Below are positions 1,809-23,387 of a stretch of 64,000 bases of DNA, piece after piece. Each line of letters opens with the position of its first letter. Position 1 is the first letter of the stretch. A program made the position numbers and the translations under genes. The notes under the pieces are model-generated. The model was given only the letters and a program-made list of their open reading frames with translations. It was not told the DNA's origin and searched no databases. The stretch spans positions 62,001 through 126,000 of the IMG/VR virus record IMGVR_UViG_3300036770_007495; one strand, written 5' to 3'.

Positions 1809-1885
1809 CGGGTGGTGTCTGGACAAGTAAACGAACTCGGTTTGGAGTCGAGTAAATGTGGGAGCGTTACCCACTCACCCGACCA
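1809..1885 (+). tRNA. tRNA-Pro(TGG), divergent second copy
   Basis: cgggtgg/tcacccg+ACCA; ctcgg-ttTGGag-tcgag. Confidence 0.75.
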
Positions 1886-1889
1886 ATTT

Positions 1890-2312
1890 ATGAGTACAAA
1901 GCATCAAGGGGATATCTCTGAAGCTTATGCAATAGCAAAATTCTTAGAGTTAGGATTTGTAGTAGCAAAGCCAGTAGGAGACAATCAGAGATATGATCTT
2001 ATCATTGATAGAGGCAATGGATTTGAACGAGTTCAAATAAAAACAGGTACACATTCTACTGGATGTGTAGTTGCATATACAAGATCTGTGTACAATAATA
2101 CAAAACAGTCAAAAGTTGTTGGATACAAAATATCGGAAATTGATCTAATTGCAGTAGTTGTTCACAATACTAAATGTGTTTATTTGTTGCAAAGCAAAGA
2201 ATTCACTGAGGATAATAGTGACAACGTAAAGAAAACCATCTACCTTAGAATTGATCCACCGAGAAACAATCAAATAAAAAAAGTTAAATGGGCAAAGGAA
2301 TACGTCATTTAA
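1890..2312 (+). CDS. free-standing PD-(D/E)XK endonuclease (group I intron-associated, I-Ssp6803I-like)
   Basis: GDISE...PVGDNQRYDLIID...RVQIKTG; start moved to ATG after tRNA-Pro. Confidence 0.8.
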   Translation: MSTKHQGDISEAYAIAKFLELGFVVAKPVGDNQRYDLIIDRGNGFERVQIKTGTHSTGCVVAYTRSVYNNTKQSKVVGYKISEIDLIAVVVHNTKCVYLLQSKEFTEDNSDNVKKTIYLRIDPPRNNQIKKVKWAKEYVI

Positions 2313-4444: not shown

Positions 4445-4518
4445 GACCCTGTAGATTAATAGTAAATCGCCACGCTTTCAACGTGAAGACGACGGAGCAT
4501 AACCGTCCTGGGTTGCCA
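4445..4518 (+). tRNA. tRNA-Glu(TTC), second copy
   Basis: cacg-ctTTCaa-cgtg; GCCA. Confidence 0.8.
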
Positions 4519-6337: not shown

Positions 6338-6404
6338 GGCTCGTCGCTGGTTAATTCTAGACACCTGGTCTTCCAACGTCGCAGGTGAAGTTAACGAGCC
6401 GCCA
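6338..6404 (+). ncRNA. T-armless tRNA-like RNA
   Basis: ggctcgt/acgagcc+GCCA; ctgg/ctag; cacctg/caggtg. Confidence 0.5.
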
Positions 6405-6408
6405 ATTT

Positions 6409-6837
6409 ATGAAAACAAAAATGCTGATATTTGGTTTGCCGGGATCCGGCAAAACCACTCTTGCAAAAAAGTTAGTTGGTGCAGTTGCTGACTCTATGCA
6501 CATCAATGCTGATGCAGTTAGAAGTGCAGTTGATGATTGGGATTTTTCGCAACAAGGCCGCATTCAACAAGCACATAGAATGCATCAATTGAGTGAAGCA
6601 AGCAATGCTGCTCTTGTAGTTTGTGACTTTGTCTGTCCTTACCAAAGCACAAGAGATGCATTGTTCAATGATTACTTTCAAGTGTTCATGGATACCATCA
6701 AGAGCAGCAGATTTGCTGATACAGATGCAATTTTTGAACATGTCAATTATTGTGATTTTCGAATTACAAATTTTGACCAAACAGAAATTTTTATCAAATT
6801 CATTGTTGATTTAGTTGTAAAACCATCCATTGTATAA
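6409..6837 (+). CDS. adenylylsulfate kinase-like P-loop kinase
   Basis: GLPGSGKTT, NADAVR, WDFS..GR, DFVCP. Confidence 0.75.
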   Translation: MKTKMLIFGLPGSGKTTLAKKLVGAVADSMHINADAVRSAVDDWDFSQQGRIQQAHRMHQLSEASNAALVVCDFVCPYQSTRDALFNDYFQVFMDTIKSSRFADTDAIFEHVNYCDFRITNFDQTEIFIKFIVDLVVKPSIV

Positions 6838-6856: not shown

Positions 6857-6939
6857 GCCCCGGTAGCGGATCCGCCTTCTAAGCGGAGCATTGTACCGTA
6901 ATTGGACGCATACAGGTTCGAGTCCTGTTCGGGGTACCA
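6857..6939 (+). tRNA. tRNA-Arg(TCT), D-arm-rewired
   Basis: gccccgg/tcggggt+ACCA; tccgc-ctTCTaa-gcgga; gcgg 6866-69 pairs ccgt 6896-99 followed by AATTGGA. Confidence 0.8.
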
Positions 6940-7030: not shown

Positions 7031-7215
7031 CCGGAATAGTTGCAAACGAGGGTTCGAAACCTCAAATAGCATCTAACAGAGATTCAAAGCATCGAAGTTT
7101 ATAGGTTGAACGGGACCCTGACAGGTTGATGGTGTGTTCGAGTGCACACGTGCTTTGAGTCTCGATAATTTATCTGGCTGTTGCAATGAGGTAAAGACCC
7201 AACGCAATGCCAAAT
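7031..7215 (+). ncRNA. structured RNA with T-loop-like hairpins
   Basis: gagattcaaagca/tgctttgagtctc; gagg-gttcgaaa-cctc; gtgtg-ttcgagtg-cacac. Confidence 0.45.
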
Positions 7216-7369
7216 AGTCCAAAAAGTAAAAGTAAAATATTCATAGGGGCTGCGTTCTCAAAACTATGGCAAAGATTTTGCTATAGCAATGAAAATAACA
7301 GCAATGCATGAAATTCCAAAAAACATGTGGATTATTTCATAGAAGTTCATATAGTTATTTAGTCAAAAT

Positions 7370-7457
7370 GCTGGTGTGGCTGAGCGGTCTAAAGCACTTG
7401 CCTTGTAAGCAAGCGGGAGTGATCCCATCGTCAGTTCGAATCTGACCACCAGCTCCA
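7370..7457 (+). tRNA. tRNA-Thr(TGT) with long variable arm
   Basis: cttgc-ctTGTaa-gcaag; V arm ggga-gtga-tccc. Confidence 0.85.
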
Positions 7458-7463
7458 TTTTCC

Positions 7464-7742
7464 ATGAACAATCGTAGATCATTCTTCAAAAGCCTCATTG
7501 GCTTGATCGTTGCACCAAAGGTTGCTGAAGCTCTACCAACAGAAGCTCCAATACCATCAATTCCTGTATATGCTCCAATGAGGAGATTAAGGGCTAATTG
7601 GTCAATTGAAGTGGAGCAAGATCTTATGCGTATGCATGGCATAGACCTTGATGCAATGCTATTAACAAATATGTCAAAAGCAATTCAGGAAGAAATTGAT
7701 AATGACATGGTAAAAAAATTAACAAAGAAAATGGGGAGTTAG
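7464..7742 (+). CDS. Tat-like signal fused to a major-capsid-protein fragment
   Basis: NRRSFFK; C-terminal half aligns to gp23 of this window. Confidence 0.75.
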   Translation: MNNRRSFFKSLIGLIVAPKVAEALPTEAPIPSIPVYAPMRRLRANWSIEVEQDLMRMHGIDLDAMLLTNMSKAIQEEIDNDMVKKLTKKMGS

Positions 7743-7806
7743 TATAGAAGCAGTACATTGGCTCGACACGCCAAAGAAGAAGGAGCGTTACCTTCACTCC
7801 CTACCA
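7733..7806 (+). tRNA. tRNA-Val(GAC)
   Basis: ttggc-tcGACac-gccaa; ACCA. Confidence 0.8.
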
Positions 7807-7807
7807 T

Positions 7808-7882
7808 GGTTCCTAAGCATAGATAGCGATGCACACGATTGGTATTTGTGATAGAGGAGTGCAAATCTCCTAGGAACCTCCA
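7808..7882 (+). tRNA. tRNA-Thr(GGT)
   Basis: cacga-ttGGTat-ttgtg; TCCA. Confidence 0.8.
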
Positions 7883-7924: not shown

Positions 7925-8011
7925 TAATAAAAAAACAATGTAGTTGCAAATAGCGAAGTTGAGATTAAAATAATGCACAAGAGCAAGATAAAGCTCAATG
8001 ATCTTTGAAAA
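7925..8011 (+). promoter_or_regulatory. rRNA-like promoter plus boxA-like antiterminator
   Basis: A-tract, TTGCAA-16 bp-TAAAAT, TGATCTTTGAAAA at 7999-8011. Confidence 0.55.
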
Positions 8012-8014
8012 ATT

Positions 8015-8420
8015 CCGTGGTGGCAGAACAATGGGTCGCCAGCCCATAATGCACTAAGCAACGTCTGAAAAGACGCCAGGTAGGTTGAAGAAGTTGTGCC
8101 GGATAAAGCTGAAATAGCCAAGGTTGGCTAACCTTGAGTGACGTAAGAAGACAACAAATCGCAATAATCTTGCTGATGGCTGTATTGTCTTGGAGATAAC
8201 CATTCCTCCCTATCATTAACAGTGAGAGTAATTAACTCATTGGATAGTGGCTGAATAATCCGACACAATGGAGGCTTGTGAGTAGTCAGGAATCTCACCC
8301 ACACTAATTTTGGCTAACGAATTCTGTATGCCACCTCCCGTAACCAATGGAAAAATTACAGAATGCGTTTGTGGGAGTCGCAGAAACCTTCAGTAATTTT
8401 CAACAATCTCGCAAGAGGAT
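8015..8420 (+). ncRNA. large ornate ncRNA candidate (GOLLD/ROOL-class)
   Basis: many complementary segments incl. ggtggca/tgccacc, ttgtgccggat/atccgacacaa, cccaca/tgtggg, attctgta/tacagaat; no credible ORF. Confidence 0.6.
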
Positions 8421-8809: not shown

Positions 8810-9265
8810 ATGAGATTTGAAGGAAAAAAAGTGATTGTTGCAAGTGGATATTTTGACCCACTGCACATTGGTCATGTTGAATATCTCAAACTAGCAAGAA
8901 TGCTGGGTGATATGCTGGTAGTCATTGTCAACAATGACAAGCAAGCTGCTCTCAAAAAAGGAAAATCATTCATGTCTGAAAATGACAGATGGCGCCTTGT
9001 GGGTGAACTCAAATGTGTGGATATTCCAGTTCTCTCCATTGACGATGGTGCATCTGTATCTGATACAATTCAAATGCTTGTAGACAAAGGTTTCAATCCT
9101 GCCATCTTTGCCAAAGGTGGTGATAGATTCAGCAATGAAATACCTGAAGCACAGGTGTGCAGAGAGCATGGTATTCAAATCGTGGATGGTCTTGGAGACA
9201 AGATTAGATCATCATCAGAATTAGTTTCCAACGCATATGAAAGTAGATTACAAATTTGTCCCTAA
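8810..9265 (+). CDS. cytidylyltransferase-family protein (TagD/RfaE-II-like)
   Basis: SGYFDPLHIGH; KGGDR; SSS. Confidence 0.85.
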   Translation: MRFEGKKVIVASGYFDPLHIGHVEYLKLARMLGDMLVVIVNNDKQAALKKGKSFMSENDRWRLVGELKCVDIPVLSIDDGASVSDTIQMLVDKGFNPAIFAKGGDRFSNEIPEAQVCREHGIQIVDGLGDKIRSSSELVSNAYESRLQICP

Positions 9266-10464: not shown

Positions 10465-11721
10465 ATGAATCGTAGAGAATTTCTTCGAGTTGGTGCTGCA
10501 GCAGGCATTTCTTTGCCAACAATGTTGCGCAGTCAAGATGCTACCAAAGTCAAAGCAGCATCAGTAATCCAAATCTTCTTGCCTGGTGGCATTGCACATC
10601 AGGATGCATGGGATTACAAACCATATGGATCACCAGAGTATCGTGGTCCATTTGCAGGCATCAAGACCAAAATTGATGGAGTTCACTTTGGTGCATTGTT
10701 GCAAAACACTGCTAAAATCAGCGACAACTTGACTGTGATTCGTTCCATGACACATGGTGAAGCAGCCCACGAACGAGGTGTGCACAACATGTTGACTGGC
10801 TACAGACCTTCACCTGCTTTGACATATCCATCATTTGGAACGGTCATCAATCACGAGTTGGGCGGCAGAAACAACTTGCCTGCATATGTGCTTGTGCCAA
10901 ATCAATTTGCTCCTGAGAATGGCACGGGATATCTATCAACACGTTACGGACCATTTGCAGTGGGGGCAAACCCAGAAGATCCTTCATTCTCCGTAAAGGA
11001 TCTCAAGTCACCTGCAGGAGTAACAGATCAGGCATTTGAACGTCGCAGAGCTCTTCTTGGTGTTGTTGATGACCATTTCAAAACCAGAGAATCACATGTG
11101 GATGCAGTCAAAGCCATGGATTCATTTTATAATGATGCATACAGCATGGTATCATCAACCCAAGCACGAGAAGCATTTGAATTGAGCAAAGAAACTGATG
11201 CAATGCGTGATGCATATGGCAGAAATGCTGCAGGCCAGCGCATGTTGCTGGCTCGCCGATTGGTAGAAGCAGGTGTTCGCATGGTCACTGTCACATATGG
11301 CAGCTGGGATCATCACAGCAATCTCAAAGGTGCGTTTGAGAGCAACATGATGAACTTTGATAAAGCATATGCCATGCTCATTACTGACTTGAAGCAAAGA
11401 GGCTTACTTGATTCTACACTGGTGATGATTACATCAGAATTTGGTCGCACACCAAAGATTAATGGAACCAATGGCCGCGATCACTGGCCTCGTGTGTTTT
11501 CCACTGTGCTTGCTGGGGGTGGAACCAAGGCTGGTTTTGCATATGGAACCAGCGATGCACTTGCTGCGGAACCGGAAACAGATCCTGTTTCGCCTGGTCA
11601 ATTGGCTGCAACCATGTACCATCTCATGGGCATTGATCCAAGAAAGAAGCTCATGACTCCTGATTTAAGACCAGTTGAAATTGTGTATGAAGAAGATCCT
11701 ATTGAAAAGATCTTGGCTTAA
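10465..11721 (+). CDS. DUF1501 protein with Tat signal
   Basis: NRREFL; IFLPGG..HQD.WD.KP; WDHH; SEFGRTPKIN..GRDHWP. Confidence 0.9.
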   Translation: MNRREFLRVGAAAGISLPTMLRSQDATKVKAASVIQIFLPGGIAHQDAWDYKPYGSPEYRGPFAGIKTKIDGVHFGALLQNTAKISDNLTVIRSMTHGEAAHERGVHNMLTGYRPSPALTYPSFGTVINHELGGRNNLPAYVLVPNQFAPENGTGYLSTRYGPFAVGANPEDPSFSVKDLKSPAGVTDQAFERRRALLGVVDDHFKTRESHVDAVKAMDSFYNDAYSMVSSTQAREAFELSKETDAMRDAYGRNAAGQRMLLARRLVEAGVRMVTVTYGSWDHHSNLKGAFESNMMNFDKAYAMLITDLKQRGLLDSTLVMITSEFGRTPKINGTNGRDHWPRVFSTVLAGGGTKAGFAYGTSDALAAEPETDPVSPGQLAATMYHLMGIDPRKKLMTPDLRPVEIVYEEDPIEKILA

Positions 11722-12845: not shown

Positions 12846-14633
12846 ATGAAAAAGCTAATTGTCCTATTTTTGAGCATTTGCACCTTAACTTTTGGTGCAA
12901 CATTAGAACAGCTTAACAACTACAGCGGCTGGATTGACTCAGTTTTAGAAAAGCAATACACTGCTGCCAAGGTAACGCCACTCAAGCGCATTGATGAAGA
13001 TACATTTGTGCGCAGAGCATATCTCACCATCATTGGCAGAAATCCAACATACGAAGAATATCAGATGTATGCCAAAGCAACTGATGCCAACAAGCGCCAA
13101 GGTTTGATTCAATTTTTAATGAATCATCCTGGACACGTTTCACACATGTTTAACTTTTGGGCTGAGTCTTTGAGACTAAGAGACAGATTATCCAACATCA
13201 ATAATTTTTCTGGTGGTCCATACATTGATTACATCAAAGACTCCATTGCTGCAAACAAACCATATACAAAGTTTGTTTCAGATTTGTTGACTGCATCAGG
13301 TTCATATTACGACAATCCTGCTACAGGCTATTTCTATCGCGATTTGGGAATGCCTTTGGACAACCTCATTGCAACTGGCAAAGTTTTCATGGGCACTGAC
13401 ATTGGATGTGCACAATGCCATGATGATCCATTCCAAGATTTCACTCAAATGCAGTTTTATAAAATGGCTGCTATGTTTAATCAAGTAGAGCTCAGGGGCC
13501 GCGGCAAAGATAAAGATCCAGCCATTGCAGCTCGTCAAAAGGCTCTAAGAGAAGAAGTAGATGCCTTGATCAAAGCTGATCCAATGAAGAATCGTGGTCT
13601 CAACAATCAGATCAACAACTTTGTTGCAGCCATGAGAGCCAATCTTGAGGTAGAGGAGAAAAGAGAATTAAAATTGCCTCACGATTATAAGTATACAGAT
13701 GCAAAGCCACTTGATACAGTTGTACCTGCAGTATTGTCAGGCAAAACAGAAATCAAGAACAAAGCTGATATGAGACAGGATGTTGTTGCATGGTTGGTGA
13801 GCCCACAGCATCCAACATTCACAAAGAACATTGTCAATAGATACTGGAAATGGGTGTTTGGTAGATACATCATTGATGACTATGACAATATTCATGATGA
13901 TGAAAAGCTCAATGGTGAGCTCATGAATGCACTTGCTAAAATCATGGTGCAGGTAAATTATGATAGCAAGCAGTTCATGTATGTGTTATTCAATACCAAG
14001 CTCTTTCAAAGAGAATTGTATGATGGAGCATACTCTAATACAGAAAGATTCATCTTCATTGGGCCTGTCAAGCAGCGTCTAACAGCCGAACAAATGTGGG
14101 ATTCAGTTGTATCCATTGCCATTGATCGCCCAGATACATTCAAGCTCAGCTTTCAAGATGAGTATGTCAAGGTGATGAGATACACCATTGAAGATCTTAC
14201 CATTGACAAACTCAAAGAAAAACAAGAAATGTATCAGAAGATTATGCGCTCCAAATACGATGCTGCTCCCAAGTATCGCAATTATCCACTTGCAAGAGCA
14301 TCTGAAGTGAATGACAACAGCCCTGTTAACACAATTCTTGAGCAGCTTGGCAGAGGCGACCGTGAGCTCATTGATACATCATCACGTGAAGGTTCTGTAA
14401 CACAAGTAATTTCATTCATGAATGGACAACTTGCTGAAGTTGCAGTAAACAAAGATACCAGCCTTGCAAAAGCCATTGCTGGCAAGTCTCCAACTGAGAC
14501 CATTGAAATTATTTTCAAGTCTGTTTTATCCAGAAAACCCACAATTGATGAGAGAAGCAAGTTCACTGGAGTGCAGGATGATGACATCATCTGGGCACTA
14601 GTCAATAGTTCTGAGTTCAAATTTAATAAATAA
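12846..14633 (+). CDS. DUF1549/DUF1553 protein with signal peptide and CxxCH
   Basis: D.TFVRRAYL.IIGR.PT; FMG..IGCAQCHD.PF; NIVNRYW; RLTAEQMWDS; WALVNSSEF. Confidence 0.9.
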   Translation: MKKLIVLFLSICTLTFGATLEQLNNYSGWIDSVLEKQYTAAKVTPLKRIDEDTFVRRAYLTIIGRNPTYEEYQMYAKATDANKRQGLIQFLMNHPGHVSHMFNFWAESLRLRDRLSNINNFSGGPYIDYIKDSIAANKPYTKFVSDLLTASGSYYDNPATGYFYRDLGMPLDNLIATGKVFMGTDIGCAQCHDDPFQDFTQMQFYKMAAMFNQVELRGRGKDKDPAIAARQKALREEVDALIKADPMKNRGLNNQINNFVAAMRANLEVEEKRELKLPHDYKYTDAKPLDTVVPAVLSGKTEIKNKADMRQDVVAWLVSPQHPTFTKNIVNRYWKWVFGRYIIDDYDNIHDDEKLNGELMNALAKIMVQVNYDSKQFMYVLFNTKLFQRELYDGAYSNTERFIFIGPVKQRLTAEQMWDSVVSIAIDRPDTFKLSFQDEYVKVMRYTIEDLTIDKLKEKQEMYQKIMRSKYDAAPKYRNYPLARASEVNDNSPVNTILEQLGRGDRELIDTSSREGSVTQVISFMNGQLAEVAVNKDTSLAKAIAGKSPTETIEIIFKSVLSRKPTIDERSKFTGVQDDDIIWALVNSSEFKFNK

Positions 14634-14637
14634 CAAC

Positions 14638-15873
14638 ATGAATACACTAACAAGACGCAACTTTGTGCTTAACCTTGCATCAGCAGGTTTAGGTGTAACC
14701 GTTCTTCCACACATTGTAGCTGCTCCAGCCAGCAAGAAAGCAGAACACATCATCTACCTCTTTATGAATGGAGGCATGAGCCATTTGGATACATTTGATC
14801 CTAAAATGGATGCTGAAGTCAAAGGTGAATTCAAATCCATCACCACAAATGCTGATTTTCAGATCTCTGAACATTTGCCTTTGATGGCCAAGCATGGTGA
14901 TAAGATGGCAGTTGTTCGTTCCATGATGGTAACAACTGGCGATCATGCTGGTGCACAATACTTGCAAAGAACATCATTCAAGAAGATTGGCACAGTTGTT
15001 CACCCCAACATGGGAGCATGGATGTGTCATTATACTGAAGATGGGAAGCCAAAAGTCATTCCACAAAACGTTTTGATTGGTGGTGGAGCTGATCACCCCG
15101 GTTCAGGGTGGATGCCTAAGAAGTATTCTCCTATTCCAGTTGCAGATCCTATGAGAGGTCTTGATAATACTAAGCTTAAGAATGCAGCAGAGTTTGCAAA
15201 GAGAGTACAAATCCTGGAAAAACTTGAAAAAGATGCAAACAAAATCATCAACCCAGCTCAAAAGTCATATGCTGAATTTTATGACCAAACAATTCGTCTT
15301 CTCAACTCAAATGAGCTTGATGTCTTTGATCTTTCCAAGGTGGATCAAGCAACAAGAGACAAATATGGCAACAATCGTTTTGGTCAAGGTGTTTGCTTGG
15401 CAAAACGCTTGATTGAAAAGGGTAATTGCAAGTTTATTGAAGTATCTGATGGTGGTTGGGATACACACGTTAATAACTTTGAATCTCTTGAGACAAAGCT
15501 CAAGGTGCTTGACCAAGCAGTTGATGCTCTTTTGCAAGACCTCAAATCATCTGGTCTTCTTGAGAAAACACTTGTTGTAATTGCAACAGACTTTGGTAGA
15601 ACACCAAACATCAACATCAACAATGGTAGAGATCATCACCCAGGTGCATTCTGCGGTGTTCTCATGGGTGCAGGCATCAAAGGCGGTCAAGCATATGGCA
15701 AGTCTGATGACAAGGGTATGAAAGCAATTGAAAACGTGGTTAGCCCAGCTGATTTCAATGCTACCATTGCTGCTGCTGCAGGATTGCCAATTGAAGATAT
15801 TGTAGTCTCACCTGATGGTAGACCATTCAAAATTGCTGATAAAGGAAAGCCTGTTACTGCTCTGCTTGCGTGA
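14638..15873 (+). CDS. DUF1501 protein with Tat signal (paralog 2)
   Basis: TRRNFV; GGMSHLDTFDPK; GWDTH; FGRTP..N..GRDHHP. Confidence 0.9.
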   Translation: MNTLTRRNFVLNLASAGLGVTVLPHIVAAPASKKAEHIIYLFMNGGMSHLDTFDPKMDAEVKGEFKSITTNADFQISEHLPLMAKHGDKMAVVRSMMVTTGDHAGAQYLQRTSFKKIGTVVHPNMGAWMCHYTEDGKPKVIPQNVLIGGGADHPGSGWMPKKYSPIPVADPMRGLDNTKLKNAAEFAKRVQILEKLEKDANKIINPAQKSYAEFYDQTIRLLNSNELDVFDLSKVDQATRDKYGNNRFGQGVCLAKRLIEKGNCKFIEVSDGGWDTHVNNFESLETKLKVLDQAVDALLQDLKSSGLLEKTLVVIATDFGRTPNININNGRDHHPGAFCGVLMGAGIKGGQAYGKSDDKGMKAIENVVSPADFNATIAAAAGLPIEDIVVSPDGRPFKIADKGKPVTALLA

Positions 15874-21911: not shown

Positions 21912-23387
21912 ATGAACAGAATCAAACCTACACAGGCTTATATCGATCAAAATCGTGCTAAGATGCTTCTCGAGAAGTGGGGTCCAGTATTGGATTACTC
22001 TTCCAAGAACGTCGCAGCAATCGAAAACGAGCACACTCGCCTCAACACAGCTATGCTCTTGGAAAACCAAGAAGCATGGTGCTTGAACGAGTCTGGCAAC
22101 CTTGCTGGTCAGGGTGGCTCATTCGGCAGCGCTGCAGGTGGTCAGTATAGCCCACCTGTTGGTATCTCCTCTGGCGATACCTACGCTCCTAATGACTCTC
22201 GTCTTCCAAAGATTTTGATTCCGATGATTCGTCGTACATTCCCTGAACTTATCAGTAACGAGATTTGCGGTGTTCAGCCAATGAGCGGCCCTGTTGGTCT
22301 TGCATTTGCTCTTCGCTACAAGTATAGCAACACTACACTTGGCGGTGGCAACTACATTGACAACGGTGCGTCCTCTCAGTCCCCTGGCTGGCACACACAG
22401 CAGAACATCAGCTACGGCTCCGGCAACGGTCAGAATGAATTGGGATACCAGTTCATTGACACCCGCTTCACCGGTACCTCCGCTACTGTTCTGTCCGGCA
22501 ATGGCTACTGGACTTTCGCTGACCAAGACCGCGGTGTCGCTGAAATTTTGAAGAACTTCGAAATCAACAGCAACATCCCAACAGTCGAAGTTAGCTTTGA
22601 AAAGACAGCAGTTGAAGCTGGTACTCGCCGTCTTGGCGCTCGCTGGTCAGTTGAGTTGGAGCAGGATCTGAAGAACATGAACGGTATCGACATTGATGCT
22701 GAGATTACAAATGCTATGGCATATGAAATCCAGGCAGAAATCGACCGTGAAATGATCATTCGCATGATCCAGACCGCACTCAATCAGCCACTTGGCGTCG
22801 GCTATTCTGTATGGAGCCCAGCTTCTGCAGACGGCCGCTGGATGGTGGAACGCAACCGTGACTTCTATCAGAGACTCATCATCGAAGCAAACCGCATCGC
22901 CGTACGTAACCGTCGTGGTGCAGCTAACTTCATCGTTGCAACACCTCGTGTGTGCGCAATCCTTGAAATGCTTCCTGAGTTTCAGTGGGTTCCTGTCCAA
23001 GGCAACGTAAACACCCAGCCAACTGGGGTTGCTAAGGTCGGCTCCCTTGGTGGAAGATTCAATGTGTACCGCGATACACGTACTGAAGTGCAGAACAGCA
23101 ATGTCTATGGTAACAACGGTTATACCGGTCAGACCTCAGGCGTTGAATATGCACTACTTGGTTACAAAGGCAGCGAATTTTATGACACTGGTATCATCTA
23201 TTGTCCGTACATTCCTGTCATGGTGCAGCGTACCATTGGTCCAAACGACTTCGCTCCACGCGTAGGCTTGCTTACACGTTACGGCGTTGTTGACAACATC
23301 TTTGGTGCTAACCTGTACTACCATGTAATCATTGTTCAGGGTCTTGGAGTGGCGTTTACGCCAGCTTCCCAGACAGTGTACTTCTGA
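21912..23387 (+). CDS. gp23: major capsid protein
   Basis: GVQPMSGPVGLAFALR; WSVELEQDL; EIDRE; YCPYIP; TRYG. Confidence 0.97.
   Translation: MNRIKPTQAYIDQNRAKMLLEKWGPVLDYSSKNVAAIENEHTRLNTAMLLENQEAWCLNESGNLAGQGGSFGSAAGGQYSPPVGISSGDTYAPNDSRLPKILIPMIRRTFPELISNEICGVQPMSGPVGLAFALRYKYSNTTLGGGNYIDNGASSQSPGWHTQQNISYGSGNGQNELGYQFIDTRFTGTSATVLSGNGYWTFADQDRGVAEILKNFEINSNIPTVEVSFEKTAVEAGTRRLGARWSVELEQDLKNMNGIDIDAEITNAMAYEIQAEIDREMIIRMIQTALNQPLGVGYSVWSPASADGRWMVERNRDFYQRLIIEANRIAVRNRRGAANFIVATPRVCAILEMLPEFQWVPVQGNVNTQPTGVAKVGSLGGRFNVYRDTRTEVQNSNVYGNNGYTGQTSGVEYALLGYKGSEFYDTGIIYCPYIPVMVQRTIGPNDFAPRVGLLTRYGVVDNIFGANLYYHVIIVQGLGVAFTPASQTVYF

What the first reader, a model, noticed from the sequence alone, without database searches (positions are those of the whole stretch)
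7464..7742. Mini-protein: twin-arginine signal plus a ~45-aa piece of major capsid protein
Seen: RRLRANWSIEVEQDLMRMHGIDLDAMLLTNMSKAIQEEIDNDMV aligns without gaps to this phage's gp23 RRLGARWSVELEQDLKNMNGIDIDAEITNAMAYEIQAEIDREMI. It follows NRRSFFKSLIGLIVAP..AEA and a Pro-rich linker, and lies 14 kb from gp23 inside the tRNA array. Established: some anti-phage systems (Lit, CapRel) sense major capsid proteins. Inference: a membrane-tethered or exported capsid decoy against such a sensor, or an assembly poison for competing phages.
Basis: partly seen in the sequence, partly recalled or inferred. Interest (0 to 1): 0.8.

Follow-up and report, generated by a model that had tools for sequence, protein, structure and literature searches.

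The report
Exported mini-protein built from capsid piece
A T4-like phage of freshwater bacteria carries a small, conserved gene that joins a twin-arginine export signal to a 50-residue piece of its major capsid protein; the gene belongs to a large, unstudied viral family whose function is unknown.

Summary
ORF 7464-7742 (+, 92 aa) has an N-terminal NRRSFFK motif with a hydrophobic stretch and an AEA site. A Pro-rich linker follows, then a segment 24/44 identical without gaps to this phage's gp23 (Pfam Gp23 E 1.3e-14).

It is not a chance scar. An exhaustive search found about 90 mini-proteins among cluster representatives. Most have the same build: MNRRxF(F/L)K, a variable hydrophobic region, then RKLKAxW(S/T)xExEQDL...HGID...EIxxEID. 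The RR pair is at least 90% conserved, and Pfam TAT_signal hits 19 of 46 members.

In the window's clade the 25-codon leader differs only by synonymous changes (8:0, 6:0, 5:0). The mature part has omega about 0.25 at depth. Fourteen near-identical variants are intact through residue 84.

The copied segment is the P-domain strand, short acidic helix and spine helix (T4 gp23 259-308). It is not the Gol region.

The gene fills a slot bounded by a tRNA-Thr and a tRNA-like element. In relatives the same leader carries other P-domain blocks, including the Gol-equivalent one, and homing endonuclease genes insert just upstream.

The phage also encodes two Tat-signal DUF1501 proteins; the host is probably Verrucomicrobiota or Planctomycetota.

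Export is likely. What the exported capsid mimic does is inferred only. A cytoplasmic decoy reading fits export poorly.

The parts
7370..7457 (+). tRNA-Thr(UGU) with a long variable arm (88 nt). It forms the upstream boundary of the cassette slot.
   Evidence: ARAGORN; Rfam tRNA 62 bits. Conserved upstream of the mini-ORF in L001, L006, L009, L010 and L016.
7464..7742 (+). Mini-protein gene, 92 aa: Tat-type signal, linker, and a gp23 P-domain segment.
7464..7532 (+). Signal-peptide region (aa 1-23): MNN, RRSFFK, h-region SLIGLIVAP, c-region KVAEA with an A-x-A site.
   Evidence: Motif statistics across the family. Leader dN/dS is near 0 (8 synonymous and 0 non-synonymous changes against L001). 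AF2 predicts a helix at residues 4-21. Pfam TAT_signal hits 19/46 relatives, but not this protein itself.
7533..7577 (+). Pro-rich linker (aa 24-38). It includes 'VYAP', a possible remnant of gp23 block C (YAPYIP).
   Evidence: AF2 predicts coil. Block C is intact in P0013, P0130 and P0099.
7578..7715 (+). gp23 block M (aa 39-84): basic strand RRLRANWS, short acidic helix, HGID loop and spine helix.
   Evidence: Aligns to T4 gp23 259-308. Helices at 48-58 and 62-91 in the AF2 model, pLDDT 83. Assignment to the P-domain and spine helix follows PMC9546572.
7716..7742 (+). Unconstrained C-terminal tail. An A-run causes frame changes among near-identical relatives, and the stop codon is supplied by the next tRNA-like element.
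   Evidence: Alignment of 16 close variants. The GS* and GELV* endings are two frames of the same conserved DNA.
7733..7803 (+). tRNA-like element: a cloverleaf with an atypical T-loop. It forms the downstream boundary of the cassette slot.
   Evidence: Rfam tRNA 46 bits. Cloverleaf MFE structure, z -2.5. About 94% identical in L001 and L002.
7808..7879 (+). Second tRNA-like element. In L001 and L006 a 160-aa ORF is inserted between the two elements.
   Evidence: Rfam tRNA 43 bits; z -4.2; insertion seen.
22626..22757 (+). The homologous segment (aa 239-282) inside the phage's own full-length major capsid gene (21912-23387).
   Evidence: The full-length gene matches Pfam Gp23 at 1.7e-91.
10465..11721 (+). 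Phage-encoded DUF1501 protein with its own Tat signal (MNRREFLRVGAAAG...). It shows the phage makes other proteins that carry a Tat signal.
   Evidence: Pfam DUF1501 E 1e-110; N-terminus. Closest cellular homologues, 52-62% identical, are in Verrucomicrobiota and Planctomycetota.
14638..15873 (+). Second phage-encoded DUF1501 protein with a Tat signal (MNTLTRRNFVLNL...).

Best explanation
Shown: the ORF is a real, selected accessory gene of an uncultured T4-like phage. The source contig is IMGVR_UViG_3300036770_007495, 224.7 kb. The gene belongs to a large, almost entirely viral and unstudied family of 65-135-aa proteins made from conserved blocks of the T4-type major capsid protein P-domain. 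These blocks are N (end of the N-arm plus the first P-domain strand, the Gol-equivalent region), M (strand, short acidic helix and spine helix) and C (the C-terminal YAPYIP strand). Most members carry a twin-arginine signal peptide in front. The window's copy is of type 'Tat + M'. It occupies a replaceable slot between a tRNA-Thr and a tRNA-like element. In sister phages the same, nearly invariant 25-aa leader carries block N, C+N or a hybrid instead, and homing endonuclease genes insert just upstream.

Inferred (about 0.65): the protein is made early or in the middle of infection from the tRNA-cluster transcript. The host Tat system then exports it and signal peptidase cuts after AEA. This releases a peptide of about 69 aa, or leaves it tethered in the periplasm.

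Inferred (about 0.25, my preferred function): block M carries the elements that glue capsomers together in the T4 capsid and that line the P-domain. These are a basic strand, an acidic short helix and the spine helix. The exported peptide would therefore act as a capsid-surface mimic in the envelope. It would bind a ligand that normally recognises this part of the capsid, most plausibly head-internal or head-associated proteins released into the periplasm by superinfecting related phages. That would make it a superinfection-exclusion factor or a superinfection sensor, comparable in size, timing and location to T4 Spackle and RI.
For: Homology to gp23.

Family size: 24 close homologues. There are 148 representatives at E<1e-3, about 90 of them mini-proteins. 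Of the 100 nearest ESM-Atlas clusters, 77 are small 'Gp23 domain' proteins; the three shown have 127-148 members each and are 95-97% viral.

Tat signal: RR is at least 90% conserved and W46 is invariant. In 59 members RR sits at median position 3, with F at +3 in 51/59, F or L at +4 in 55/59 and K or R at +5 in 45/59. The uncharged stretch has a median of 14 residues. Pfam TAT_signal hits 19/46 members and TM_PetC hits 4/46. Atlas feature neighbours include a TAT_signal cluster and the periplasmic Fe-hydrogenase small subunit. Only three ORFs in the window have such N-termini; the other two are DUF1501 proteins, a family annotated as Tat substrates according to my recollection.

Selection: leader comparisons give 8:0, 6:0 and 5:0 synonymous to non-synonymous changes. 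The mature part has omega 0.25 (window vs L017) and 0.24 (N-type, L001 vs L010). Fourteen close variants from independent samples are intact through residue 84. The minis keep the residues conserved in gp23 but have lost the conserved Arg of EI(D/N)RE, R 68% in gp23 against N/Q/K in the minis. This argues for independent evolution rather than repeated copying from gp23.

Cassette slot. Metatranscriptome contigs join 7459 to 7732 and 7368 to 7734.

Structural role of the block: PMC9546572.

No late-promoter-like TAAATA lies upstream, unlike the structural genes.
Against: The window's own h-region is short: 9 uncharged residues before K19. Pfam TAT_signal and NCBIfam do not hit this particular protein.

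No export experiment exists. No partner or ligand is identified, and no conserved neighbouring gene points to a function.

The closest pairwise comparison (window vs L016) gives omega about 2, and L016 is frameshifted. Several clade members carry deletions or truncations, so the cargo can decay.

The M-block tree is unresolved. Transcription is not proven, because RNA-library contigs cover the ORF only at low depth and there was no DNA control. The superinfection role rests on analogy only.
Confidence: 0.4

Rival explanations
1. The protein acts on the cytoplasmic side. Its signal docks it at the TatBC receptor or the membrane, while the capsid segment stays in the cytoplasm. There it binds folding or unassembled gp23. 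It could tether the phage's own capsomers to the membrane, where T4-type proheads start. Alternatively it could poison folding or assembly of a rival's capsid protein by standing in for the matching P-domain segment.
For: All three blocks used by the family (N, M, C) are parts of one folding unit, the P-domain. They include the sites of the gp31-bypass mutations (292, 306, 307, 455). Any one block could compete during folding, which would explain why different blocks are interchangeable at one locus. T4 prohead assembly starts on the inner membrane. The residues kept are those conserved in gp23 itself.
Against: A signal peptide is an odd way to keep a protein in the cytoplasm. The A-x-A-type sites and the Pro-rich linkers suggest passage and cleavage. 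The gene is accessory and patchy: present, absent or swapped among close relatives, and absent from cultured T4-like phages. That argues against a core assembly role.
Confidence: 0.2
2. This is the first reader's idea: a decoy for host immunity that senses the major capsid protein, such as Lit-type, CapRel-type or Avs7/Dsr1-type sensors. It might titrate the sensor or carry the bound sensor out through Tat.
For: Several defence systems do sense conserved capsid protein features, some together with EF-Tu. Sister alleles at this locus carry the Gol-equivalent block N; P0015 is 65% identical to gp23 100-136. The locus turns over fast, as conflict genes do.
Against: The window's block is not the Gol region. 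The known sensors are cytoplasmic, and ligand binding activates them, so a decoy would set them off. Export removes the decoy from where sensors work. No defence or anti-defence gene is linked to the locus. I did not run PADLOC on the protein.
Confidence: 0.12
3. The conserved leader is a capsid-targeting sequence like that of the T4 internal proteins. The mini-protein would be packed into the head, trimmed by the prohead protease after VAE, and injected with the DNA.
For: The population pattern matches the T4 internal-protein locus as I recall it: a nearly invariant N-terminal leader with swapped cargo at one site. In this clade the leader ends in V-A-E|A, resembling the L/I-x-E sites of T4 gp21. 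The phage encodes a gp21-type protease.
Against: Across the wider family the N-terminus is a textbook RRxF(F/L)K signal with a variable hydrophobic region, and no conserved x-E site. Known T4 targeting sequences are not hydrophobic RR signals (recalled, not tested).
Confidence: 0.08
4. The ORF is a non-functional scar: a stray piece of a capsid gene captured during repair of a homing-endonuclease cut in a hyperplastic tRNA region, open by chance.
For: Endonuclease genes insert right next to it in relatives. Several clade members are truncated, deleted or frameshifted. The tail is unconstrained.
Against: The family is large and diverse and keeps the same architecture and an invariant RR and W. 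The leader differs by synonymous changes only. Omega is about 0.25 at depth. Fourteen independent close variants are intact through the capsid block.
Confidence: 0.05

Closest known systems
T4-type major capsid protein gp23 (Pfam PF07068), P-domain strand, short helix and spine helix (T4 residues 259-308)
   Same: Clear sequence homology (E 1e-14), the same conserved residues (R, K/R, L, A, W, E, QDL, HGID, EID) and the same predicted two helices.
   Different: Only about 50 of about 490 residues are present, so there is no A-domain, insertion domain or N-arm and it cannot form a shell. The conserved Arg of EI(D/N)RE is lost. It is fused to an export signal. It is 41% identical to, and not sister to, the phage's own gp23.
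Twin-arginine (Tat) signal peptides, for example those of the phage's own DUF1501 proteins
   Same: N-terminal RRxF(F/L)K, a moderately hydrophobic stretch, a basic residue in the c-region and an A-x-A-type site. The RR pair is nearly invariant across the family.
   Different: The passenger is tiny (about 69 aa) and virus-derived. In the window's clade the h-region is short (9 uncharged residues), and the whole leader is far more conserved than signal peptides usually are.
T4 internal-protein locus (ipI and relatives): conserved capsid-targeting leader with hypervariable cargo (recalled from the T4 literature)
   Same: One locus, a nearly invariant N-terminal leader, different cargo in close relatives, and a setting in a hyperplastic region with homing endonucleases.
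   Different: Here the leader is a hydrophobic RR signal, not the short acidic targeting sequence. The cargoes are all pieces of one protein domain. Packaging was not tested.
T4 Spackle (Sp) and antiholin RI: small periplasmic proteins made before the late genes, with cleavable signals (timing and size recalled, not tested)
   Same: About 90-100 aa precursors with an N-terminal signal and a small helical mature part. I recall both as non-late genes of T4-type phages acting in the envelope against or in response to superinfection.
   Different: No sequence similarity was found. Sp and RI use Sec-type signals (recalled) and are not capsid-derived. The function here is untested.
Gol peptide of T4 gp23, the trigger of the Lit protease
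   Same: A short, highly conserved capsid-protein segment with a biological activity of its own. Sister alleles at this locus carry the equivalent segment.
   Different: The window's segment is a different part of gp23. Gol acts in the cytoplasm as part of nascent gp23, not as a separate exported gene product.

Membership tests
Major capsid protein Gp23 (PF07068, HK97 fold) | Significant sequence match to the family profile | tested here: met
   E 1.3e-14, 54.8 bits against a cut-off of 24.4. All 46 aligned relatives hit it.
Major capsid protein Gp23 (PF07068, HK97 fold) | Complete fold (N-arm, P-domain, A-domain) able to form capsomers | tested here: not met
   Only profile positions 141-195 of 376 are present. 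The protein is 92 aa, and the AF2 model shows a signal helix, coil and two helices. It is a fragment homologue, not a capsid protein.
Tat (twin-arginine) signal peptide | S/T-R-R-x-F-L-K-type motif near the N-terminus | tested here: met
   N-R-R-S-F-F-K at residues 3-9. Family-wide, RR is at least 90% conserved, with F at +3 in 51/59, F or L at +4 in 55/59 and K or R at +5 in 45/59.
Tat (twin-arginine) signal peptide | Uncharged, moderately hydrophobic h-region of about 12 or more residues | tested here: inconclusive
   The window protein has 9 uncharged residues (SLIGLIVAP) before K19. The family median is 14, IQR 9-17.
Tat (twin-arginine) signal peptide | c-region with a small-x-small signal peptidase site, often with a basic residue | tested here: met
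   K19 and A21-E22-A23|L24. Relatives have sites of the type IKA|L, VKA|L, IQA|L and VEA|L.
Tat (twin-arginine) signal peptide | Match to curated signal profiles (PF10518, TIGR01409) | tested here: inconclusive
   There is no hit for the window protein. PF10518 hits 19/46 relatives, best E 1.4e-4.
Tat (twin-arginine) signal peptide | Tat-dependent export shown by experiment | not testable with these tools
   This needs fractionation in tat+ and tat- cells and an RR-to-KK mutant.
Gol-type Lit trigger | Corresponds to the Gol segment of gp23 (T4 about 93-122, the most conserved region) | tested here: not met
   The window ORF aligns to T4 259-308. Block N of the sister alleles aligns to gp23 100-136, equivalent to T4 about 94-133. 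The Gol coordinates are from memory; the review PMC3014915 gives 'a 29-residue region, the most conserved in gp23'.
T4 internal proteins with a capsid-targeting sequence | Conserved N-terminal leader ending in an L/I-x-E protease site, with variable cargo at one locus | tested here: inconclusive
   The conserved leader and swapped cargo are met. V-A-E|A is present in this clade but not across the family.
T4 internal proteins with a capsid-targeting sequence | Presence in the virion | not testable with these tools
   This needs virion proteomics.
RiPP-type precursor (conserved leader, variable core) | Adjacent modifying enzyme or dedicated peptidase/transporter | tested here: not met
   No such genes lie in the flanks of the window, L001, L002, L006, L010 or L012-L015.
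Small exported superinfection proteins (T4 Sp, Imm, RI) | Sequence or profile similarity to those families | tested here: not met
   PHROGs returns only 'major head protein'. The resemblance lies in size, signal and genomic setting only.

The most novel reading that the evidence does not exclude
The Tat-signal capsid-fragment proteins are a new class of phage envelope factor. They would be exported mimics of the capsid P-domain surface that recognise head-associated proteins released by superinfecting kin. The cell would then exclude or sense relatives by their capsid-binding proteins. The interchangeable N, M and C blocks at one locus would set the specificity.
Probability: 0.2. Interest if true: 0.85.

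Novelty: categorically new. Interest (0 to 1): 0.66.

Why it matters
Capsid proteins are treated as building blocks and, more recently, as alarm signals for bacterial immunity. Here a phage keeps a separate, selected gene that sends a piece of its capsid protein out of the cytoplasm. Thousands of relatives in uncultured T4-like phages do the same.

No paper found in six full-text searches describes this, and databases call these proteins only 'hypothetical' or 'Gp23 domain-containing'. Whatever the role turns out to be, it would be a new use of a capsid fold. Candidates include exclusion of related phages, sensing of superinfection and control of assembly at the membrane.

The finding also matters for annotation. 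Short Pfam Gp23 hits are easily taken for broken capsid genes, and this may inflate or confuse g23-based diversity surveys.

The family is small, modular and easy to test: an export assay, a pull-down and a plaque assay would be enough to start.

Tried and rejected
1. Leader derived from gp23. I suspected the leader came from gp23 331-355 (NRRGAANFIVATPRV...), prompted by a weak secondary BLAST alignment (E 7). I rejected this once distant relatives showed a typical, sequence-variable Tat signal with an invariant RR.

2. Group I intron or other structured RNA spanning the locus. Rfam finds only tRNAs. The conserved downstream DNA is two tRNA-like cloverleaves.

3. Recent copy of a capsid gene. 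No gp23 in the phage collection or the 1.84-billion-protein library reaches 60% identity over this short block, and most lie at 33-46%. The minis also have their own signature.

4. Other copies in the window. There are none, by motif, DNA pattern or tblastn.

5. Near relatives among cultured phages. There are none by DNA. Protein searches hit only full-length capsid genes, one place per record.

6. Metagenome-contig scan with a degenerate leader pattern: no hits. The search for related loci with the family alignment failed because no stretch was conserved enough.

7. Foldseek of the AF2 model against the PDB: no hits, and not informative for a two-helix peptide.

8. Tree of M blocks to decide between one and many origins: unresolved, with 51 columns and 3 well-supported branches.

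9. An apparent extension of homology upstream of the leader in L010 and L011 runs through a stop codon and is an alignment artefact.

10. Literature: six full-text searches (one further call failed on a short term) found nothing on Tat-signal capsid fragments.

Full report
WHAT IS THERE

The ORF is at 7464-7742 on the + strand and encodes 92 aa. It starts 6 nt after the CCA end of a tRNA-Thr(UGU) with a long variable arm (7370-7457). Its stop codon lies inside a tRNA-like cloverleaf at 7733-7803, which is followed by a second one at 7808-7879. Rfam scores these at 46 and 43 bits; ARAGORN missed both. No other in-frame start is possible.

The protein reads as follows:
- MNN, RRSFFK, SLIGLIVAP, K, VAEA.
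- A Pro-rich linker.
- RRLRANWS, an acidic stretch, HGID, and then a long helix ending near residue 84.

BLASTP gives E 4e-16, Pfam Gp23 gives E 1.3e-14 on profile positions 141-195 of 376, and the PHROG for major head protein gives 2.6e-13.

WHICH PART OF THE CAPSID PROTEIN

Alignment to the solved T4 capsid protein places the segment at T4 gp23 259-308. According to the T4 head structures, residues 282 and 284 lie in the P-domain and 292, 306 and 307 in the spine helix. A basic P-domain strand and a short acidic P-domain helix make the contacts between capsomers near the quasi-threefold axes (PMC9546572).

The AF2 model was built on a 46-sequence family alignment and has a mean pLDDT of 83. 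It shows a signal helix (4-21), coil (22-47), a short helix (48-58) and a long helix (62-91). I call this segment block M. It is not the Gol region, which lies about one fifth of the way into gp23. That coordinate is from memory; the review PMC3014915 calls Gol the most conserved gp23 region.

IT IS A FAMILY, NOT A SCAR

A word-indexed search found 24 proteins of 61-108 aa sharing the 25-residue leader almost letter for letter. An exhaustive HMMER search of 1.84 billion cluster representatives found 148 hits. About 90 of these are mini-proteins of 65-135 aa.

Most have the same build:
- MNRRxF(F/L)K.
- A hydrophobic stretch that varies in sequence.
- A short linker.
- RKLKAxW(S/T)xExEQDLxxxHGIDxExEL...EIxxEIDxEI.

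In a 46-member alignment the RR pair is at least 90% conserved and the Trp is invariant. In 59 members RR sits at median position 3, and F, F/L and K/R follow at +3, +4 and +5 in 51, 55 and 45 cases. The uncharged stretch has a median of 14 residues. Pfam TAT_signal hits 19 of 46 members (best E 1.4e-4), and the Rieske-type Tat anchor model hits 4 more.

In the ESM Atlas, 77 of the 100 nearest clusters are small 'Gp23 domain-containing' proteins. The three clusters listed have 127-148 members each and are 95-97% viral. Other feature neighbours include a TAT_signal cluster and the periplasmic Fe-hydrogenase small subunit.

No source gives these proteins any name beyond 'hypothetical'. Cultured phages in INPHARED show only their full-length capsid gene. 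Six full-text searches found no paper on such proteins.

SELECTION

Across eight loci of the window's clade, the 25-codon leader differs mostly at synonymous sites. Comparisons of the window with L001, L008 and L010 give 8:0, 6:0 and 5:0 synonymous to non-synonymous changes, at dS 0.36-0.7. This cannot be explained by conservation of a DNA or RNA element, so the leader is translated and constrained.

The mature part gives omega 0.25 (window vs L017) and 0.24 (L001 vs L010, another block type), although dS is near saturation. Fourteen distinct near-identical variants from independent samples are intact and conservative through residue 84. They differ only in the last few residues, where an A-run shifts the frame into stops supplied by the next tRNA-like element.

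Against this, the closest divergent pair (window vs L016) gives omega about 2 on few changes, and L016 is frameshifted. A few clade members are deleted or truncated, so copies can decay.

Column by column, the minis keep almost all residues conserved in full-length gp23. They have, however, lost the conserved Arg of EI(D/N)RE, which is R in 68% of gp23 but N, Q or K in the minis. The window's copy does not group with the window's own gp23 in an otherwise poorly resolved tree. The family therefore evolves on its own and is not repeatedly recopied from capsid genes.

A CASSETTE SLOT

L001 (a 190-kb contig) and L002 (97 kb) are syntenic. The tRNA, the leader and the downstream tRNA-like elements are about 89-97% identical to the window, but the DNA between the leader and the tRNA-like element is unrelated.

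In the relatives the same leader carries other parts of gp23:
- Block N, as in P0015, which is 65% identical to gp23 100-136 and is the Gol-equivalent region.
- Block C plus block N, as in P0013, where block C matches gp23 413-436 with the YAPYIP strand.
- Hybrids such as P0007.

More distant members combine M+N, C+M or M+C. All three blocks belong to the P-domain. T4 residue 455, in block C, lies in the P-domain sheet, and residues 106-131, in block N, form the ordered segment after the N-arm.

The two alternative C-termini seen in relatives, GS and GELV, are simply two reading frames of the conserved start of the tRNA-like element.

In L006, L007 and L009 an HNH homing endonuclease gene sits between the tRNA-Thr and the mini-ORF (PHROG 1271, E 1e-20). 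L008 has another endonuclease-like ORF there, and L010 and L016 have unrelated ORFs. Contigs from RNA libraries of other samples join 7459 to 7732 and 7368 to 7734, so in those variants the cassette is absent or replaced exactly at the tRNA boundaries.

A distant member, P0078 in L013, also sits in a tRNA array, 8 nt upstream of a tRNA-Leu. Other members lie among small accessory genes of large phage contigs.

THE PHAGE AND ITS HOST

The window is part of IMGVR_UViG_3300036770_007495 (224.7 kb). Its gp23 is only about 34% identical to the nearest cultured phages, which are cyanomyoviruses.

The phage encodes T4-type head and tail proteins. It also encodes two DUF1501 proteins with their own Tat signals and a DUF1549/DUF1553 protein with a Sec-type signal. 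The closest cellular DUF1501 homologues, at 52-62% identity, are in freshwater Verrucomicrobiales and other Verrucomicrobiota, and in Planctomycetota.

Only three ORFs in the 64 kb have a Tat-like N-terminus: the two DUF1501 proteins and the mini-ORF. So the phage encodes other proteins that carry a Tat signal, which makes a working Tat signal on the mini-protein more credible. Near-identical DNA occurs in freshwater, lake, estuary, lagoon, soil and subsurface metagenomes.

HOW IT MOST LIKELY WORKS

Shown:
- It is a selected gene.
- It has a Tat-type N-terminus at family level.
- It contains a capsid P-domain segment.
- It sits in a swappable slot.

Inferred, about 0.65: the protein is exported by Tat and cut after AEA. 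The caveat is that the window's h-region has only 9 uncharged residues, and the signal profiles do not hit this particular protein.

Inferred: it is expressed early or in the middle of infection. It lies in the tRNA cluster and lacks the TAAATA late-promoter-like motif seen in front of the structural genes.

Preferred function, about 0.25: in the envelope, the peptide mimics the capsid surface formed by the basic strand, the acidic helix and the spine helix. It would bind something that normally binds that surface. The most plausible ligands are head-associated proteins that reach the periplasm from superinfecting relatives, giving either exclusion or a superinfection signal. This is an argument from anatomy and from analogy with T4 Spackle and RI, not a result.

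Rivals:
- Action on the cytoplasmic face of the membrane on folding or unassembled gp23, either as a tether for the phage's own capsomers or as a poison for rivals (0.2).
- A decoy for capsid-sensing immunity (0.12). This fits poorly because the block is wrong, the compartment is wrong, and binding usually activates such sensors.
- A capsid-targeting leader like that of the T4 internal proteins (0.08).
- A non-functional scar (0.05).

VERDICT

The finding is real, and it is more interesting than a single odd ORF. It is a member of a large, unstudied viral family that fuses an export signal to conserved pieces of the major capsid protein. Its 'exported' reading is supported, and its 'decoy against Lit or CapRel' reading is not. 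The function remains to be shown.

Noticed in passing
window 8007-8400 (+ strand assumed): This ORF-free stretch is by far the most abundant part of the region in four metatranscriptome runs. Summed contig depth reaches 8,646, against about 5-150 in the flanks. This suggests a stable non-coding RNA inside the tRNA cluster. It overlaps a sub-threshold Rfam manA-RNA hit (8000-3307 is not meant: the hit is 8000-8307, 18.5 bits against a cut-off of 55). The folding z-score is only -1.5. L001 and L002 lack this stretch.
   Followed up: partly
window 7733-7803, 7808-7879, 6857-6936, 4445-4515: Four tRNA-like elements are scored by the Rfam tRNA model (46, 43, 33 and 49 bits) but not called by ARAGORN. 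The first two have atypical T- or D-arms and may be degenerate or non-canonical tRNAs.
   Followed up: partly
window 10465-11721, 12846-14633, 14638-15873: The phage encodes two DUF1501 proteins with Tat signals and a DUF1549/DUF1553 (PSCyt2/PSD1) protein with a Sec-type signal. They lie between the tRNA array and the tail and head genes. These families are typical of Planctomycetota and Verrucomicrobiota. The nearest cellular homologues of the first DUF1501 are 52-62% identical, mostly in freshwater Verrucomicrobiales. The relative L006 carries the same genes.
   Followed up: partly
window, upstream of many genes (e.g. 12846, 14638, 15892, 17075, 20134, 34383): A TAAATA motif, resembling the T4 late promoter, lies 5-15 nt upstream of many start codons, with no visible Shine-Dalgarno sequence. 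The two ORFs that directly follow tRNAs (7464 and 8810) instead have CCA-TTTT and a very short leader.
   Followed up: no
L006 1253-1798, L007 1783-2328, L009 142-684, L008 385-969: HNH homing endonuclease genes, and another endonuclease-like ORF, are inserted exactly between the tRNA-Thr and the mini-ORF in relatives. This site is an insertion hot spot.
   Followed up: yes
L001 10309-10791, L006 2061-2543: A 160-aa ORF with no family match is inserted between the two tRNA-like elements that are adjacent in the window.
   Followed up: no
L001 10001-10237, L010 6001-6243 and proteins P0008-P0022: Sister alleles carry the gp23 segment equivalent to the T4 Gol peptide (IRRTFPELI..GVQPMSGPxGLxF) behind the same leader. 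This would be worth testing with Lit-type proteases.
   Followed up: partly
window 7370-7457: The tRNA-Thr(UGU) has a long variable arm (88 nt), which is unusual for a threonine tRNA. L002 and L003 have a normal 76-nt tRNA-Thr(UGU) at the same place.
   Followed up: no
window 7200-7350, minus strand: Small hydrophobic ORFs lie on the opposite strand just upstream of the tRNA-Thr (e.g. 7264-7350, 28 aa). They are conserved in L001, and a TAAATA-like motif on that strand lies at about 7352-7362.
   Followed up: no
window 1812-2312, 6385-6837, 8810-9265: Accessory ORFs are interspersed with the tRNAs: a PD-(D/E)XK endonuclease (E 9e-33), a P-loop kinase-like protein (APS_kinase/AAA_33) and a cytidylyltransferase-like protein.
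   Followed up: no
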